Shown: in pieces, positions 15,777 to 22,055 of the stretch
Layout of the letters: every line of letters begins with the position of its first letter
Position numbering within the stretch: position 1 is the stretch's first letter
Assembly: GCA_010909165.1 (NCBI GenBank)
Contig: VJWM01000044.1
Coordinates: 1,674,001-1,738,000, forward strand
Direction: 5' to 3'
DNA length: 64,000 bases
Origin: Anthoceros angustus
Taxonomy: Eukaryota > Plantae > Anthocerotophyta
The notes under the pieces: generated by a model
Databases searched by the model: none
The model's input: only the letters and a program-made list of their open reading frames with translations
Told to the model about the DNA's origin: nothing
Made by a program: the position numbers and the translations under genes

Positions 15777-16934
15777 CTTCTAGAAGATAGAAGGCTTTAT
15801 CTTGAACTGTCGAGCCAGAAATATCTGGCGGAGGTCCCTAGAAATACCTGGCGGAGTGAATCCCTTGAGCATGTTTCCCTAAGGATGCACTGCTAGACTG
15901 TTCAGAAAACACTGCCTCTTTAGACCTTTGTTGAACTTTTTGGCCTGTGCTCCTTTCATACCTTTGAGCTGTATGCAGCTTTCCTCCCTTCAAACTTGTA
16001 AGGTCTACCACTTCCTTACCTTCCCCCAGCTGATCCAAGGCTCCTTTGGGCCTATCGACGTTGCCATGATCACATGATTTCATTCCCTCAAATGACCGAG
16101 ACGTTGCTTTTTGGCAGTTGATGGAGACATGACGTAAAAGCATTCAGTCACCTGATGTCCCCACTGAAGGACTGGGAGCAGTGTTTACATAACGTATACA
16201 TCTCCGACCCAAAAATCAGGCTGTTGTATGTTGGTCCTGCTACGAGTGCATTGGATCACATCATGGCTCAGCCAGTTGGGCCTTGGAACGACAAATTTCA
16301 TGTCATGCTAATTATCCTGACGCTCTGGACTACCGCACCTTGAACTTGTGAAGAGCCATTCTGTACTCTCATCTCTAACGTGTACAGAAAAAAGCCTATT
16401 CGACAATACGCTCCTCTGCTCCTATTCCGCTACAGGTCGTACAGGATGCACCCTTGCTGCTGCTGATCAACAAAACCCCTGCCGTCAATCCTCCCGAGTA
16501 CCTACCACCACCAGTGACCACCACCTCTCCGTGGATCGTCTGCGAGATCTTCAAATGCGTGCACGTACCGTGGATCGCGGTTCCCGAACGTAAGCTTTAT
16601 CTGAACAGACTTTAGGGAGACGGGAATAACTTTATCTGCCACGTCATGGGAGTACCGTCCGGTTGTGAGAGAGAATCACGGACTGTCGACTTGGCAGTCA
16701 CTGGGCCTTCTTCTCGCACACGCCCACACTAGCCTCCAGCACTTCCAGCCTTGGCGAGTCTTGATCCCTCGCCACTGACCGACAAAGGCTTCTCAACTCC
16801 GCTTCCACATCCATCGAGACCAGCAGCTAGCACTTGCGGTGAGCATCTGCGTCTCTGGTCCTGGTTCTGAGTCTGTTTATCCTTCTGAGGGCGTTGCGTT
16901 CTTGCGCTGGACGATATCGCGTGGAATTAGGACC

Positions 16935-17500
16935 ATGACGGGCTCTGGATCCCCCACAGCGACTCACCGGAAGGCCAAAAAGGGTGACGGTTCTGTTCGT
17001 CTGGACAAGCACTCAGGTGCGGTTGCCTATGCAGCCTTGTAGCATTGCTTGTAGCTATTTTTTGTGGAGGGAGAGCTTAATCCGATGTTCTACTTGTTCA
17101 GGAACAGGGAGGCCGGGCGGGGCGAAGAAAGGTACAGCACTTCAACAGCACCTAAGTATTATGTTTAGGTTGGAAAAGAAATGCGGTGCCCATTTTGATG
17201 ATACGTGATATGTGCAGGCGGTGCAGGAGGGAGCTACACATGGGGTGTTCCTGGCCAAGAGTTTCTGGACGGTGACGTTTCGGCACTCGATCGGAGCGAC
17301 CCGAACTACATGGACGAAGACGAGCTTGCAGCTACTGTAGACAAAGAGTACGTTGCCTTAACCTTCAGCAAGTTGGGTGCAAGTTGGCCACTTACAGGTG
17401 ATCGAAGGAACTTGTGTCCTTACATTGTCTGTGTTTCGGCAGGTCTATTGAAAAGGTTGAAGGTTCTGCTGAGCCTGTTGTTAAAGTAGTCGAAGACTAA
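16935..17500 (+). CDS. 99-aa small protein consisting of the PDCD4-N-terminal/Stm1/Tma10-like motif (4 exons)
   Basis: Exons 16935-17016, 17102-17131, 17218-17347 and 17443-17500 splice in phase with GT-AG sites. The product contains DKHSGTGRPGGAKKGGAGGSYTWGVPGQE...LDRSDPNYMDEDE. Confidence 0.85.
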
Positions 17501-18130
17501 GGCTCCGTTGTAAAAGCTTTTGATTTGAGAGAAGAGGACCCATGGAGTTTTCTCCCTGTAAATATCTTGGCGTCCCCGTAACCCAGCCGCAGGCTATGAC
17601 GAGGATGCTGACTGGATTAGGCCCTTTCTTATGACGATGTTGGATGTCGCAATGCAAGGTAGTTGGCAAACTGGAGGGCAGCTCACTCTGTCAATTGGCA
17701 AGTTTGATTGAACACAGACAAAATCCCCCTTGTCGAAAATCCGACTCGTACAAAAGTGAATACCTGCGACAGAATTCACAAACAGCCTAAGCTGTGGCTT
17801 CAGAATGTTACAGAGGTATGTAATTTAGTGCAGAAATCTGCAGCAGCTATACTAGACAAGTCTACGTGCAAGTTCCCACCTATCCAAAAAACTGTAGCAC
17901 CTCACAAGACGGCTAGAACGTGACCGTCCAAAAATCGATGAGTCATGGGAAAGACTCTCAACCTCGAGCACTAAGGCCTCTGCAGGTATCCGCAGATATC
18001 TAGAAAGCTCGGGAAAAAACCGATTGTCAAATGACGTGCAAACGTAACACACTGAAGGGAACTGACCCTCGCACAAAACAAAGCCAAAATGCCGCAGATT
18101 CACATATCCACATCACATAAGGTGCAGAGG

Positions 18131-21100
18131 TTAGTCAGGAAACCCACGCTCTGCCAAAGCTGCTTCGAAACGCTTGAATGAAAGAGGACGCAACTCCGTG
18201 CTTGTATCATCTTGAGGGGCTGGGTAGTAATCTGACCGGAGCTGAAAGTCACGCAGGTTGGTGCACTGTTTCAGCATGAAGAGAAAGTGTTCATGCACAG
18301 TGCCGTGGACAAACAACTTTCTTAGAGTGACACACTCCGAGATCAGCCCCACTGCTGGCAGCGAAAGACCCCGGTGATTGAGATCTTTGTCAACTGGCGG
18401 ACTGTACTTCAACTCCATCAGCCCCAGCTGCCTCAGGTCTGTCAGGAGAAACCTTTCCCACTGGCTCAGGTCATGACAGCCCTGTGGAGCACTTAGGGCA
18501 TAACCCACTGCATCACTGATATCCAGCTCGAGCTTTGAGAGAGAGGGGTAACGAGCCAGAGACCCCAAACCCCAGGACATTGCCGGTGGCTTCCGCAAAC
18601 CTTTCACCTCGCCTTCTGCCCTGATATTGATCTCCTCTAATACAGGACAAGAGCTGAGACCCATGGCAGAGAGGTACTTAAGCAAGGTCCAGGGTGCCGT
18701 CCACAAAGACAGAGATCTTAAGGAGCTCCAGGAGCTGGGAGGTGGCTTCGGCCTTTGCGGAGTAAAATATTGGGTACACCTCCACCCCAAGGACAACTCA
18801 TCAGAAGCAGTGAGCGGATGTGTCGCATCAGGCTGTAGCCTGCCTCGTCCAATTCCCGCCAGAGTATTGAATGGTGTCTTGCCAACTGGAAACTGAGAAG
18901 TAGCCACACTACCCGACTGTGACTGCATCCAACTTTCTGCATGGTTCATCCCAGAAAGCTGATTATTGAACTGTGAGAACGGACCGCCATCTGATGAACT
19001 GCTGAGATAAGCAGATTGTTGGCCGCCGGTATTGAAGCAGCCACGCCCTTTCGTTCGAGATGCAGAGTAGGCAGGTTCTGAATCACAAATGTCTGGAACT
19101 CCCATGACAACAAAGGAGTCATCATCATCTAAGGATCTCCTTGCTCTTTTGCTGGGAACCTGCAACCCTCCTTCCCCTGGATCAAAACCTATGGTCACAA
19201 AGTCACTGGCGTCCCCCGCATCAAACCCCATCGTCACAAAGCCGGTGTCTTGCTCTCCAGCATCGAAACCCACCGTAACGAAATCACTGTCTACGCAACC
19301 GAGCCCATCTGTTGATTTATAACTCCCACGCCCTGGTGCATGGCTCGGTTCTGGGGCATGGAAGCGTGGCGGTGCAGGATATGGTTCTGGTGCATGATAC
19401 CCAAGAGCCACAAAATCAGTTCCTTCGCCAACAGATTCAAAGAAGCCTGCAGATTGGGACTGTTCCGAGCCCCGATTTCTTGACTTACTCTTCCTGCTCA
19501 TCAAGGCGGGGTGTCGTCCATGACCAGAGCTCTTGGTCATCGCGTCCTGAAACAGATCTTCAGCGCTCATGCTAAGTATATCTGCAACGCTCAGACCACC
19601 AGACAACCCAGACGTGCCTGCAGCTGCAGCTTCTTCCCGCGCTACAATTTCCTCATCCCAGATGCAATCTATGCTGAGAGTGCGAATCACGGGCTGTATT
19701 GGCTCCAGGGCTTGCAGGACCTGAGCACAGTTGAGTTGCCCGCAACTAGTGATCTCCACATCCCGAAGAGTCGGGGCCAGGCGCTTCACACAGTCTAGCA
19801 GCCCATCGTACGATATGCCTCCAACGCTCCTCAGATGCAGTTGCTGAAGACGTGTACAACCCTTGGCAATAGCTGACAAGGACCTGTCCACGAGGTCTGC
19901 ACAATCCTTAATAGATAGCTTGACCAGCTGCTTGCAAAGGGCAAGTCCATCTGGTTCCGGGCCCTTGCACACTCCGTGAAAGTGGCTCAGCCTAAGAACT
20001 CTCAGGTTCTTGCAGTGGCTCTGTAGGGTCTCCAGCGCAGGCCCTGCATCCCTGACATTCTGAGCCAGGAGGAAGACCAGCTCTTCGAGGTGAGGAAGAG
20101 ACTTAAACATTTCCTGCAGTCCAGTGCGAGTGATGTTGGCATCCTCCGATGCAATACCATCTGTAACTCGACCTCGAGACGGATCCCACGCATTAGTGTC
20201 CACCAGATGGAGCACCCGGAGCTTGGTGCACGTTGTGCCAATGCACACCAGGGCCTCGTCCCCAACGGGATCCACAAACCGTGGGTCAAAATCGCAAAGC
20301 ACAAAAAACTCCTCCAAATTCTTACAACACTGGGTGATAGTCCGGAGCTCCTGCGACCGAAAACCCTCCGGCGAGATCTTCAACAGGTTCAAGCTCCGAA
20401 GGTTGCTAGCACAAGACCCTTCCACAGCCAAGGCAGGGGCCACGTCCTCCGTCCAGCAGTAAAACTTGGAAAGATCCAGGCTGTTGAGTTTCGGGCAGTT
20501 GCTAAGCAAGCCCACGAGCTCGCTCCCAGCTTCCAGAGCCGACGCAGGGTCCGTCGGCCTCTGGTGCCATCTAACGAGCCGCACAGACTCCACACAAGGC
20601 CACAAGCAGGCCACCAACTGCACATCATGCACACTCTTGGCATAGATAGTCACTTCCTTCACTAGAGGAAACGCCTGTAAGATGAGCCAGGCAAACCGGT
20701 CCCCCTGCCTGGTAGCCAAGTAGATAGAGTAACCCCACGGAGAGACCCGCGACAAATCAAGGCAAGTCACTTGATTGAAGCACATGGGGAGGGAAGCGAG
20801 GTCAACTATGTTACCCCGCAGAGTCAGACTCGTCCTGGTCAGCCGGTCCAGCAGGTACCAGTCACGGCACACAAGAGACATACAATTCCTGGCGCGCACA
20901 TCAGTGACGCAGATGAAAATGCTGATGAGAATCGGCTCAGGGATATCAGAGATGTGCGTACCATGCAGCCCGCACTTGCAGCCAGGCGGATGCCTTGCAA
21001 GCCTCTGCAGCTCTGGCCCCCAAAACGGAGCCTGCGGCACAGGCAAAGGATCCGTATAGAAAGCTCCCACACTTGGCTCCGGGTAGTGCCCCCAGCCCGG

Positions 21101-21265
21101 CGCCGCAGGCATGGACTGGACAACCTCGCCCCCGAAATCCATGCTCCCAGACATCAACCCTTGGTTACACAGAGAGCCCCCGCCATCTCTCCCGCATGCC
21201 CATGCCGGTGACTGTGCCTGGGCCTGTGCCCGCCCCGGGCCCTGCCGCGCCCCATGCTTGAACAT
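18131..21265 (-). CDS. MAX2: F-box/LRR protein MAX2/D3 (karrikin/strigolactone signalling), single exon, 1044 aa
   Basis: It has an F-box (THISDIPEPIL...RARNCMSLVCRDWY...RTSLTLRGN), LRR motifs LDLSKFYCWTED and DFDPRFVDPVGDEAL, and DKDLNHRGLSLPAVGLISECVTLRKLFVHGTVHEHF. The C-terminal helix PAPQDDTSTELR...RFEAALAERGFPD ends in Asp. Confidence 0.95.
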   Translation of the reverse strand: MFKHGARQGPGRAQAQAQSPAWACGRDGGGSLCNQGLMSGSMDFGGEVVQSMPAAPGWGHYPEPSVGAFYTDPLPVPQAPFWGPELQRLARHPPGCKCGLHGTHISDIPEPILISIFICVTDVRARNCMSLVCRDWYLLDRLTRTSLTLRGNIVDLASLPMCFNQVTCLDLSRVSPWGYSIYLATRQGDRFAWLILQAFPLVKEVTIYAKSVHDVQLVACLWPCVESVRLVRWHQRPTDPASALEAGSELVGLLSNCPKLNSLDLSKFYCWTEDVAPALAVEGSCASNLRSLNLLKISPEGFRSQELRTITQCCKNLEEFFVLCDFDPRFVDPVGDEALVCIGTTCTKLRVLHLVDTNAWDPSRGRVTDGIASEDANITRTGLQEMFKSLPHLEELVFLLAQNVRDAGPALETLQSHCKNLRVLRLSHFHGVCKGPEPDGLALCKQLVKLSIKDCADLVDRSLSAIAKGCTRLQQLHLRSVGGISYDGLLDCVKRLAPTLRDVEITSCGQLNCAQVLQALEPIQPVIRTLSIDCIWDEEIVAREEAAAAGTSGLSGGLSVADILSMSAEDLFQDAMTKSSGHGRHPALMSRKSKSRNRGSEQSQSAGFFESVGEGTDFVALGYHAPEPYPAPPRFHAPEPSHAPGRGSYKSTDGLGCVDSDFVTVGFDAGEQDTGFVTMGFDAGDASDFVTIGFDPGEGGLQVPSKRARRSLDDDDSFVVMGVPDICDSEPAYSASRTKGRGCFNTGGQQSAYLSSSSDGGPFSQFNNQLSGMNHAESWMQSQSGSVATSQFPVGKTPFNTLAGIGRGRLQPDATHPLTASDELSLGWRCTQYFTPQRPKPPPSSWSSLRSLSLWTAPWTLLKYLSAMGLSSCPVLEEINIRAEGEVKGLRKPPAMSWGLGSLARYPSLSKLELDISDAVGYALSAPQGCHDLSQWERFLLTDLRQLGLMELKYSPPVDKDLNHRGLSLPAVGLISECVTLRKLFVHGTVHEHFLFMLKQCTNLRDFQLRSDYYPAPQDDTSTELRPLSFKRFEAALAERGFPD

Positions 21266-21530
21266 CCCGGCTCGCTTCCGCTACCACTCCATTCCCCAGA
21301 CCACGGCCGGTGCCCCCGGCTCTACCCCAGAGGATACTCGTCCACGAAGTACATCCTGCTGTCGGCCCTGTCGGCGGAGGCCTCCACTGGCGGGAATACC
21401 ATAACAACAACTCCACTCCGCTAGCACCTGAGCGGCTCGAGGCCGCGGAGTTCCATGCGCATCGTCCCGCCTCAGATTGGCTGCCTTCTGGCAGGGCAAG
21501 GGCAAAGGCGAAGGCGAGGACACCACAAAC

Positions 21531-21588
21531 AGAAGAGAAGAGAAGAGAAGAGAAGAGAAGAGAAGAGACGAGAAGAGAAGCGAAGCGC
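21531..21588 (+). repeat. (AAGAG)n microsatellite in the MAX2 5' leader
   Basis: About 10 AAGAG units, which read as CT-rich on the MAX2 sense strand. Confidence 0.9.
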
Positions 21589-22055
21589 AGCGAACAGAAG
21601 AAAGAACAAGCGGGGCCCTACAGCCAGCGGCAAGACAGGCACTCGGAGATGCAGCAGATGCTCCACAAGAGGCAGCAGCGGCCAGGGCGCTAAACGCACA
21701 AGAACCAAGCCGAGCCGAGCCGAGCCGAGCGAGAGGGTGGAGGAGGAAGAACACAGTCTCTCGTCACATCGTCTACAGGCGCACGAATGTGACGCACCAG
21801 CAGTTTTCGACCGAGGTTTATTTAAACAGCGCGTAGGTAAACAGAAGCAAAGGGCGGTCGCACGGGCGATATTTTTGTCGAAGGATAGAGCGGGGTCCCG
21901 GGCTGGGCCTAACTGCTGCGGCAGGCTGCCAGCACGTCTGCGTACGGTGATAATCCGCGCCATCACTTGATGCGCTTAATTTGGTGGGTTAACGGACAGG
22001 ATGCGAGACATGGCCGATATTACCAATCCGGGCTCTTACAAGTTGCGTTGCAGGA

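What the first reader, a model, noticed from the sequence alone, without database searches (positions are those of the whole stretch)
18735..19620. MAX2 carries a ~290-aa insertion with five tandem ATG8-interaction (AIM/LIR)-like motifs
Seen: between LRRs the ORF contains TDFVAL, DSDFVTV, DTGFVTM, ASDFVTI and DDDDSFVVM (19100-19425), the middle three followed by GFD, plus a KRARR basic patch. Known: AIM/LIR is acidic-[WFY]xx[LIV], as in ULK1 DFVMV; two of the five here end in Met. Angiosperm MAX2 (~690 aa) has only a short acidic/basic loop at this position. Inference: this MAX2 could couple KAI2/SMXL signalling or its own turnover to selective autophagy.
Basis: partly seen in the sequence, partly recalled or inferred. 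Interest (0 to 1): 0.7.

Follow-up and report, generated by a model that had tools for sequence, protein, structure and literature searches.

The report
Hornwort-type MAX2 with conserved loop motifs
This is an expressed, intron-free plant MAX2 hormone-signalling gene, probably from a hornwort, whose floppy internal loop carries five copies of a short motif kept by selection; the motif only partly looks like an autophagy (ATG8) docking site, and what it binds is unknown.

Summary
Window 18131-21265 (-) is one uninterrupted 1044-aa MAX2/D3 F-box-LRR gene. Its inter-LRR loop (aa 538-845, window 18731-19654) is 308 aa, against 67-72 aa in two angiosperms.

- **Exonic:** an RNA-type contig covers the whole ORF without a joint, yet splices three introns of the neighbouring gene.
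- **Disordered:** AlphaFold2 gives the loop pLDDT 24-42.
- **Not chance:** F-[VI]-x-x-G occurs 5 times; 0 of 100,000 shuffles reach that.
- **Conserved:** the only close relative found (P0001, 72% identical in the core) has the same five units. Unit positions are 67% identical, the rest of the loop 23%, and synonymous sites are saturated. That indicates purifying selection.
- **Rare:** no other MAX2, and nothing else among 1.84 billion representative proteins, carries the array.

The ATG8 reading is only partly backed. The conserved unit is [ST]-D-F-V-x-x-G-[FY]-D. The AIM hydrophobic position (F+3) is the least conserved one: L/V, V/A, M/M, I/P, M/R. Only unit 1 is a canonical AIM in both species. 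A complex prediction with an ATG8 proxy gave no answer.

Best reading: a lineage-specific, multivalent docking array with an unidentified partner. This scan had not met it on other DNA.

The parts
18131..21265 (-). MAX2/D3-type F-box LRR gene: one exon, 1044 codons plus stop
   Evidence: ORF list; Pfam; homologues; solved MAX2 structures; RNA-type contig with no joint over 17443-21487
20831..20944 (-). F-box (aa 108-145)
   Evidence: Pfam PF18511 F-box_5, E 7.4e-9, 35.5 bits against a cutoff of 25.5
19655..20830 (-). N-terminal LRR block (aa 146-537)
   Evidence: AF2 strand/helix repeats with pLDDT mostly 80-96; 72% identity to P0001
18731..19654 (-). Expanded inter-LRR loop (aa 538-845), intrinsically disordered
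   Evidence: AF2 pLDDT 24-42 and no secondary structure over aa 565-842; no counterpart in solved MAX2; rich in G, S, P and A
19550..19654 (-). Conserved loop head, EIVARE...LSVADIL.MSAEDLF (aa 538-572)
   Evidence: 71% identity to P0001; AF2 helices at 538-552 and 560-564
19394..19420 (-). Unit 1, TDFVALGYH (aa 616-624); canonical AIM core in both species
   Evidence: P0001 has SDFVKVGFD here; liverwort loops carry DFW[DG][VF]G at a similar place
19262..19288 (-). Unit 2, SDFVTVGFD (aa 660-668)
   Evidence: the P0001 orthologous unit is SDFVTAGFD
19220..19246 (-). Unit 3, TGFVTMGFD (aa 674-682)
   Evidence: the P0001 orthologous unit is SDFVTMGFD
19181..19207 (-). Unit 4, SDFVTIGFD (aa 687-695)
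   Evidence: the P0001 orthologous unit is SDFVTPGFD
19136..19150 (-). Basic patch KRARR (aa 706-710), NLS-like
   Evidence: KRAK in P0001; KRRR/KRRK at the matching place in moss loops
19091..19129 (-). Unit 5, DDDDSFVVMGVPD (aa 713-725), a variant ending in G-V-P
   Evidence: P0001 has EDSFVERGVPS
18134..18730 (-). C-terminal LRR block and C-terminal helix (aa 846-1044)
   Evidence: Aligns to 9kkx_C residues 565-763; 73% identity to P0001; invariant terminal Asp

Best explanation
The gene is the MAX2 orthologue of a seedless plant, most likely a hornwort. MAX2 is the F-box subunit of the SCF ligase that works with KAI2-type receptors to degrade SMXL repressors.

In this lineage the hypervariable loop between two C-terminal LRRs has grown to about 300 disordered residues. 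An older loop motif has been multiplied into an array:
- one unit, [ST]-D-F-V-x-x-G-[FY]-[DH];
- three tandem units every 13-14 residues;
- a basic, NLS-like patch;
- a fifth variant, D-S-F-V-x-x-G-V-P.

I read this as a multivalent short-linear-motif platform. Each unit would offer the same small hydrophobic/acidic epitope (F, V, G-F, D) to a folded partner domain. The flexible loop would hold that partner next to the receptor- and substrate-binding end of the LRR solenoid, or would control where MAX2 sits and how long it lives.

Shown: gene identity, exonic status, predicted disorder, non-random repetition, and purifying selection on the units.

Inferred: that the units are binding sites, and the multivalency. 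The partner is not identified. ATG8 is one candidate and fits only some of the units.
For: - **Identity:**
- **Lineage:** the window and P0001 form their own clade with 100/100 support, apart from mosses, liverworts and a lycophyte.
- **Exonic:** the contig of RNA-type run X1 lies on 17443-21487 with 0 differences and no joint. The same contig skips three GT..AG introns of the neighbouring gene and stops outside the transcript. DNA run X2 covers introns and intergenic DNA. Organism B (about 94% identical) is also continuous over 17721-21246.
- **Disorder:**
- **Repetition beyond chance:**
- **Selection:** unit positions are 67% identical to P0001, against 23% for the rest of the loop and 72-73% for the folded LRRs. 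Four-fold sites are saturated (0.09 the same within units). Third-codon-position identity between units is 0.17-0.58 while amino-acid identity is 0.6-0.83. Tandem Repeats Finder finds no DNA repeat.
- **Lineage restriction:** only P0001 is found by the word search of the loop. A profile search of 1.84 billion representatives finds P0001 plus one chance hit, a bacterial repeat protein. Metagenome contigs give nothing.
- **Possible single-copy ancestors of the unit** in liverwort and moss loops.
Against: - Only two sequences carry the array, so per-position conservation rests on one species pair plus paralogous units.
- AF2 shows no local confidence rise at the units.
- No partner was identified.
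- No experiment exists for this protein.
- Structural studies of MAX2/D3 found here do not discuss this loop. Some D3 chains in PDB are shorter than the full protein. The core ligase function therefore probably does not need the loop.
Confidence: 0.5

Rival explanations
1. One reading: the units are ATG8-interacting motifs (AIM/LIR). The array would tether SCF-MAX2, or MAX2 itself as cargo, to ATG8 on autophagic membranes or in the nucleus.
For: - All units lie in a disordered stretch and have D/S/T just upstream of an aromatic residue.
- Window units 1, 2 and 4 and P0001 unit 1 fit [WFY]xx[LIV]. Three of these fit the stricter xLIR pattern.
- F-V-T-V and F-V-K-V match the GABARAP-type core (W/F)-(V/I)-x-V (PMC7615515). 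Solved plant ATG8s score among the best matches to the ATG8 proxy.
- Multivalent weak LIRs are known in autophagy receptors.
Against: - The +3 pocket residue is the least conserved position. It is M, A, P or R in 6 of the 10 units, and Met, Ala and Pro are described as too small for HP2.
- Only unit 1 is canonical in both species.
- An AIM does not explain the invariant G at +4 and F at +5.
- Moss loops have F-L-T-P at the likely homologous site.
- No MAX2-ATG8 link was found in papers. The Arabidopsis MAX2 interactome paper does not mention ATG8 or autophagy.
Confidence: 0.2
2. Sticker-and-spacer reading: the aromatic/acidic units separated by G/S/D-rich spacers are not sites for one partner. 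They would drive MAX2 into nuclear condensates, for example with SMXL proteins.
For: Regular spacing of Phe pairs in a G/S/P/A-rich disordered loop next to a basic patch.
Against: Stickers usually conserve composition, not a 9-residue word. Here V, G, F and D are fixed in register in both species, while other aromatic residues in the loop are not conserved. No localisation data exist.
Confidence: 0.1
3. Unit 5 is a COP1-type Val-Pro motif. Hornwort MAX2 would then bind the COP1 WD40 domain as a competitor or substrate, linking KAI2 signalling to light signalling. This need not exclude the other readings for units 1-4.
For: - G-V-P-[DS] is conserved in both species after an acidic run (DDDD, or ED in P0001).
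- The published signature is E-S-D-E-x-x-x-V-P-[E/D]-hydrophobic-G, and VP motifs are sequence-divergent (PMC6745501).
- The window has V-P-D-I.
Against: - V-P is a two-residue core and is frequent by chance; a second VPS occurs in the same loop.
- Spacing to the acidic run differs from the signature.
- P0001 has V-P-S-S without the hydrophobic residue.
- There is no binding evidence.
Confidence: 0.07
4. Neutral expansion: the loop is junk-like low-complexity sequence. The repeats would be a recent duplication or gene-conversion product with no function.
For: The loop varies from 62 to 308 aa across plants, and most of it is unalignable.
Against: - The units are as conserved as the folded domain across a deep split (path length 0.42 substitutions per site).
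- Synonymous sites are saturated.
- There is no DNA-level repeat.
Confidence: 0.05

Closest known systems
MAX2 / DWARF3 F-box LRR proteins (solved: rice D3 5hzg, 6brp; Striga MAX2 9kkx)
   Same: F-box, LRR solenoid and C-terminal helix align end to end, and the many invariant residues include the terminal Asp. The gene forms its own lineage on the MAX2 tree.
   Different: The loop between aa 537 and 846 is 308 aa, against about 55 in Striga MAX2 and 67-72 in Petunia and tomato. It carries a motif array seen in no other MAX2 except P0001.
Canonical AIM/LIR motifs, especially the GABARAP-type core (W/F)-(V/I)-x-V (ULK1, ATG13 and PCM1 chimeras in PDB 6hyo, 6hyn, 6hyl)
   Same: Acidic or Ser residues, then F-V-x-[V/I/L], in a disordered region. 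P0001 unit 1 reads D-F-V-K-V and window unit 2 reads D-F-V-T-V.
   Different: The +3 residue is not conserved and is often Met, Ala, Pro or Arg. The conserved word extends to G-F-D, which AIMs do not need. Binding is untested.
CUL3-KBTBD6/KBTBD7, an E3 substrate adaptor that uses a LIR to dock on GABARAP (recalled from memory; not in the review read here)
   Same: It would be the precedent if the ATG8 reading were true: a cullin-RING substrate receptor positioned by ATG8-family binding rather than degraded by autophagy.
   Different: It has a single W-V-x-V motif in a Kelch protein of animals. There is no homology and no evidence here.
COP1 VP-peptide motifs (HY5, UVR8, CRY1/2, CO, COL3)
   Same: Unit 5 ends in G-V-P-[DS] after an acidic run, and this is conserved in both species.
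   Different: The spacing and following residues differ from the published signature, and the match is short.
Loop motifs of other bryophyte MAX2 proteins
   Same: Liverworts have RGF..DFW[DG][VF]GRK and mosses have TDSFLTPHRL[VI]xAKRRR at comparable places. These resemble unit 1, and unit 4 plus the basic patch.
   Different: They are single copies, not arrays. Homology is suggested by position and a few residues only.

Membership tests
MAX2/D3 F-box protein | N-terminal F-box of the COI1/TIR1/MAX2 type | tested here: met
   PF18511 F-box_5, aa 108-145, 35.5 bits against a cutoff of 25.5
MAX2/D3 F-box protein | LRR solenoid alignable over both halves to solved MAX2/D3 | tested here: met
   9kkx_C at E 5.4e-180, covering aa 73-537 and 844-1042; D3 chains at E about 1e-137; confident AF2 solenoid
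MAX2/D3 F-box protein | Conserved C-terminal helix ending in Asp | tested here: met
   R1032, F1033, E1034 and D1044 are invariant in 28 sequences
MAX2/D3 F-box protein | Falls inside the MAX2 tree as its own lineage | tested here: met
   Clade with P0001 at 100/100, within the bryophyte/lycophyte part of the tree
MAX2/D3 F-box protein | KAI2-dependent degradation of SMXL | not testable with these tools
   Needs genetics or biochemistry
AIM/LIR (ATG8-interacting motif) | Core of an aromatic residue at 0 and L/I/V at +3 | tested here: inconclusive
   Met by window units 1, 2 and 4 and by P0001 unit 1. The other six units have M, A, P or R at +3 (definition from PMC7615515)
AIM/LIR (ATG8-interacting motif) | Acidic, Ser or Thr residues just upstream | tested here: met
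   [ST]-D, T-G or D-S precede F in all 10 units
AIM/LIR (ATG8-interacting motif) | Accessible, disordered context | tested here: met
   AF2 pLDDT below 45 across the units
AIM/LIR (ATG8-interacting motif) | Both pocket residues conserved between orthologues | tested here: not met
   F is kept 10 of 10 times. The +3 pairs are L/V, V/A, M/M, I/P and M/R
AIM/LIR (ATG8-interacting motif) | Binding to the LDS pocket of ATG8 | not testable with these tools
   The complex prediction with an ATG8 proxy returned no answer, which counts neither way
COP1 VP motif | Val-Pro pair with upstream acidic or anchor residues and [E/D]-hydrophobic after it | tested here: inconclusive
   The window has DDDD-SFVVMG-VP-D-I and P0001 has ED-SFVERG-VP-S-S, against the signature in PMC6745501
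SUMO-interacting motif array (STUbL-like) | Core of [VIL]-rich four residues flanked by acidic residues (ELM-type patterns recalled from memory) | tested here: not met
   No unit matches either orientation of the pattern

The most novel reading that the evidence does not exclude
Hornwort MAX2 would be an ATG8-docking cullin-RING substrate receptor. The F-V-x-[V/I/L] units, at least unit 1 (which may be shared with liverworts as D-F-W-x-[VF]-G), would bind ATG8 multivalently. KAI2-SMXL signalling or MAX2 turnover would then be wired to autophagy in an early land-plant lineage.
Probability: 0.15. Interest if true: 0.7.

Novelty: new variant of a known kind. Interest (0 to 1): 0.4.

Why it matters
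MAX2 is the single, deeply conserved hub of karrikin/KAI2-ligand and strigolactone signalling. Its folded part hardly changes across land plants. The papers read here do not discuss this loop.

A lineage in which that loop carries a selected, five-fold motif array points to an extra, lineage-specific input or output of the ligase, such as a partner, a localisation signal or turnover control. It offers a concrete handle: five Phe residues to mutate and one loop to delete, in a plant group where KAI2 signalling is thought to be ancestral in form.

If the partner were ATG8 or COP1, it would tie this hormone pathway directly to autophagy or to light signalling. As it stands, it is a well-supported sequence feature without a known function.

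Tried and rejected
- **Complex prediction.** The loop segment aa 655-735 was tested against an ATG8. The verdict was no answer (score 0.00, controls not run), which is no evidence either way.
  - I fetched intronless ATG8 genes from giant-virus MAG contigs with a short degenerate DNA pattern.
  - I used L003:1540-1899 as a proxy. It hits Pfam ATG8 at E 1e-47 and is close to solved yeast and plant ATG8.
- **Tandem Repeats Finder on the loop DNA:** nothing.
- **Profile of the repeat block against PDB sequences:** nothing at E up to 10.
- **Metagenome contigs:** 252 pattern matches, none a relative.
- **Word search restricted to the loop:** only P0001.
- **SUMO-interaction-motif reading:** rejected by pattern.
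- **Folded beta-repeat domain reading:** rejected, because AF2 gives no structure there.
- **Organism B's orthologue (about 94% identical):** seen only through read laying, whose tables list a fraction of the differences. Its motif sequences could not be read.
- **Papers:** no description of this loop or of a MAX2-ATG8 link was found.
Full report
**What is there**

The minus strand of window 18131-21265 holds one open reading frame of 1044 codons.
- It has a COI1/MAX2-type F-box at aa 108-145.
- About 90 named or unnamed MAX2 proteins from mosses, liverworts, lycophytes, ferns, gymnosperms and angiosperms match it at E values from 0 down to about 1e-125.
- It aligns to the solved Striga MAX2 (9kkx_C, E 5e-180) and rice D3 chains in two blocks, aa 73-537 and aa 844-1042.
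- Nothing in those structures corresponds to aa 538-843.
- In a 28-sequence alignment the flanks of that gap are invariant (..D-C-[IV]-W-D and W-x-x-L..L-W). The extra residues are therefore a loop between two LRRs, not a misjoined exon.

**Whose gene**

- The window's own protein is not in the large protein collection. The best hit, P0001, is a 961-aa protein from a 5.5-kb Logan contig.
- On a maximum-likelihood tree of the folded parts, the window and P0001 form a clade with 100/100 support. It stands apart from liverworts, mosses and the lycophyte. The two are 72% identical, with a path length of 0.42 substitutions per site.
- That placement, together with notes by other agents of this scan on the same genome, makes a hornwort the likely source. 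I did not prove the species.

**Is the loop exonic?**

Yes, on the evidence.
- **Run X1 (organism A) behaves as RNA.** One 4365-nt contig lies on 17443-21487 with no difference and no joint. The same contig skips three GT..AG introns (17012-17098, 17129-17216, 17347-17443) of a convergent plus-strand neighbour. It has no cover beyond about 16756 and 21728.
- **Run X2 from the same sample behaves as DNA.** It covers introns and intergenic DNA.
- **Two runs of a second organism (B)** show the same splicing of the neighbour. They have a continuous, roughly 94%-identical copy over 17721-21246.

The gene is therefore intronless and the loop stays in the mRNA in two species. Contigs cannot rule out a rare spliced isoform.

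**How unusual is the loop?**

Using identical boundaries, loop lengths are:

| Group | Loop length (aa) |
|---|---|
| This window | 308 |
| P0001 | 277 |
| Gymnosperm-type sequences | 238-268 |
| Ferns | 133-241 |
| A lycophyte | 224 |
| Mosses and liverworts | 114-167 |
| Petunia and tomato | 67-72 |

However, this is the extreme of a hypervariable loop rather than a one-off insertion. AlphaFold2, with the 28-sequence alignment, models the solenoid confidently. It leaves aa 554-842 at pLDDT 24-42 without secondary structure, apart from short helices at 538-552 and 560-564. The loop is rich in G, S, P and A.

**The motifs**

Written in register they are:
- T-D-F-V-A-L-G-Y-H
- S-D-F-V-T-V-G-F-D
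- T-G-F-V-T-M-G-F-D
- S-D-F-V-T-I-G-F-D
- then KRARR
- D-S-F-V-V-M-G-V-P

F-[VI]-x-x-G occurs five times, and no shuffle in 100,000 exceeded three.

P0001 has the same five units in the same order, with KRAK before the last one:
- S-D-F-V-K-V-G-F-D
- S-D-F-V-T-A-G-F-D
- S-D-F-V-T-M-G-F-D
- S-D-F-V-T-P-G-F-D
- D-S-F-V-E-R-G-V-P

**Selection**

Between the two species:
- The folded parts are 72-73% identical.
- The unit positions are 67% identical.
- A conserved loop head (E-I-V-A-R-E ... L-S-V-A-D-I-L-x-M-S-A-E-D-L-F) is 71% identical.
- The remaining 176 aligned loop positions are only 23% identical.
- Four-fold degenerate sites are saturated everywhere (0.23-0.46 the same; 0.09 within the units).

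Among the ten units, third-codon-position identity is 0.17-0.58 while amino-acid identity is 0.6-0.83. Tandem Repeats Finder sees no DNA repeat. The similarity is therefore maintained at the protein level and is not a young duplication or gene conversion.

**Restriction to this lineage**

- A word search limited to the loop returns only P0001.
- A profile of the repeat block searched against 1.84 billion representatives returns P0001 and one bacterial repeat protein that matches by chance.
- Metagenome contigs give nothing.
- PDB sequences give nothing.
- The library represents clusters at 50% identity and seems poor in hornwort proteins. Absence elsewhere in hornwort proteomes is therefore not shown.

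**Does it look like an AIM?**

Partly. The review PMC7615515 defines the core as an aromatic residue at 0 and L/I/V at +3. It states that Ala, Pro and Met do not fill the HP2 pocket. It gives (W/F)-(V/I)-x-V as the GABARAP-type core.
- **Points in favour:** acidic or Ser/Thr residues upstream, disorder, F at 0 in all ten units, and V at +1.
- **Canonical units:** window units 1, 2 and 4 and P0001 unit 1. F-V-T-V and F-V-K-V match the GABARAP-type core.
- **The problem:** +3 is the most variable position. The orthologous pairs are L/V, V/A, M/M, I/P and M/R.
- **Unexplained conservation:** G at +4, an aromatic residue or V at +5, and D at +6 are (nearly) fixed, which an AIM does not explain.
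- **Only unit 1** is canonical in both species.

The selected word is thus [ST]-D-F-V-x-x-G-[FY]-D, longer than and different from an AIM. No paper found connects MAX2 with ATG8, and the Arabidopsis MAX2 interactome paper mentions neither ATG8 nor autophagy.

**Attempt at a direct test**

- A short degenerate DNA pattern for the conserved K-Y-L-V-P-x-D-L-T-V-G-Q-F stretch found 30 giant-virus MAG contigs with intronless ATG8 genes.
- One of them, L003:1540-1899, hits Pfam ATG8 at E 1e-47. It is close to solved yeast and plant ATG8, so I used it as a proxy.
- The complex prediction with loop aa 655-735 returned no answer.

**Other readings**

- **SUMO-interaction patterns** do not match any unit.
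- **COP1 Val-Pro motif:** unit 5 ends in G-V-P-[DS] after an acidic run in both species. This resembles the COP1 signature quoted in PMC6745501, but the match is short and imperfect.
- **Sticker-spacer role in condensates:** possible, but it does not explain the fixed nine-residue word.
- **Neutral repeat:** contradicted by the selection data.

**Possible origin**

Liverwort loops carry R-G-F-..-D-F-W-[DG]-[VF]-G-R-K. Moss loops carry T-D-S-F-L-T-P-H-R-L-[VI]-x-A-K-R-R-R. These resemble unit 1, and unit 4 plus the basic patch. The array may therefore be an amplification of an older single bryophyte loop motif. This rests on position and a few residues only.

**Where the loop sits**

In Striga MAX2 the matching gap is between residues 510 and 565. 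That is two repeats before the LRR17 and LRR18 loops (residues 604-616 and 642-650) that clamp the SMAX1 RGKT motif next to the receptor. A 300-residue flexible loop rooted there could reach the receptor-substrate site. This is inference.

**Verdict**

The proposed function is one candidate that fits a minority of the units. I file the finding as a new variant of a known protein: MAX2 with a lineage-specific, selected motif array whose partner is unknown. Interest is moderate.

Noticed in passing
window 16756-17700 (+): A convergent, spliced plus-strand gene with GT..AG introns at 17012-17098, 17129-17216 and 17347-17443. RNA-type contigs run from it straight into the MAX2 3' end, so the two transcripts probably overlap at their 3' UTRs. 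Organism B uses a different boundary for the third intron (17349-17456, with 11 other letters).
   Followed up: partly
alignment A1, loop columns (fern, gymnosperm-type and angiosperm rows; P0009-P0011, P0017-P0026, P0033, P0036, P0052): Most MAX2 loops of ferns, gymnosperm-type sequences and angiosperms share one [LF]-D-L-N motif (EAR-like in form). The mosses, liverworts, the lycophyte, the window and P0001 lack it. I found no discussion of it in the papers read.
   Followed up: partly
P0005, P0012, P0013, P0015, P0016 (mosses); P0008, P0022 (liverworts): Conserved single loop motifs: moss T-D-S-F-L-T-P-H-R-L-[VI]-x-A-K-R-R-R and liverwort R-G-F-..-D-F-W-x-x-G-R-K. These are possible single-copy relatives of the hornwort units.
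   Followed up: partly
P0003 and P0004 (Sphagnum, NCBI, 705 aa) against P0002 (JGI, 878 aa): The NCBI Sphagnum models lack about 105 loop residues and the N-terminal extension that the otherwise nearly identical JGI protein has. This is probably a gene-model artefact that treats part of the loop as an intron.
   Followed up: no
window 19550-19594 and 19502-19519 (-): Two further islands in the loop are conserved with P0001: L-S-V-A-D-I-L-x-M-S-A-E-D-L-F (a short predicted helix) and G-R-H-P-A-L. They are specific to this lineage and their role is unknown.
   Followed up: partly
window 21488-21603 and about 21728: A CT/TCC-rich simple repeat lies just upstream of the ORF, inside the transcribed 5' region. 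Contigs break there.
   Followed up: no
L002-L031 (IMG/VR giant-virus MAG contigs): Thirty contigs binned as giant viruses encode intronless ATG8 homologues of 115-135 aa. L003 and L011 encode a 214-aa form with a 94-aa Cys-rich tail after the processing Gly. Whether these are viral genes or host contamination was not checked.
   Followed up: no
window 17577, 18338, 18372, 19638, 19975: The contigs of DNA-type run X2 differ from the window mainly by C>T changes (9 of 13), although X2 is from the same sample as X1, which matches perfectly. This could be allelic or a library effect.
   Followed up: no
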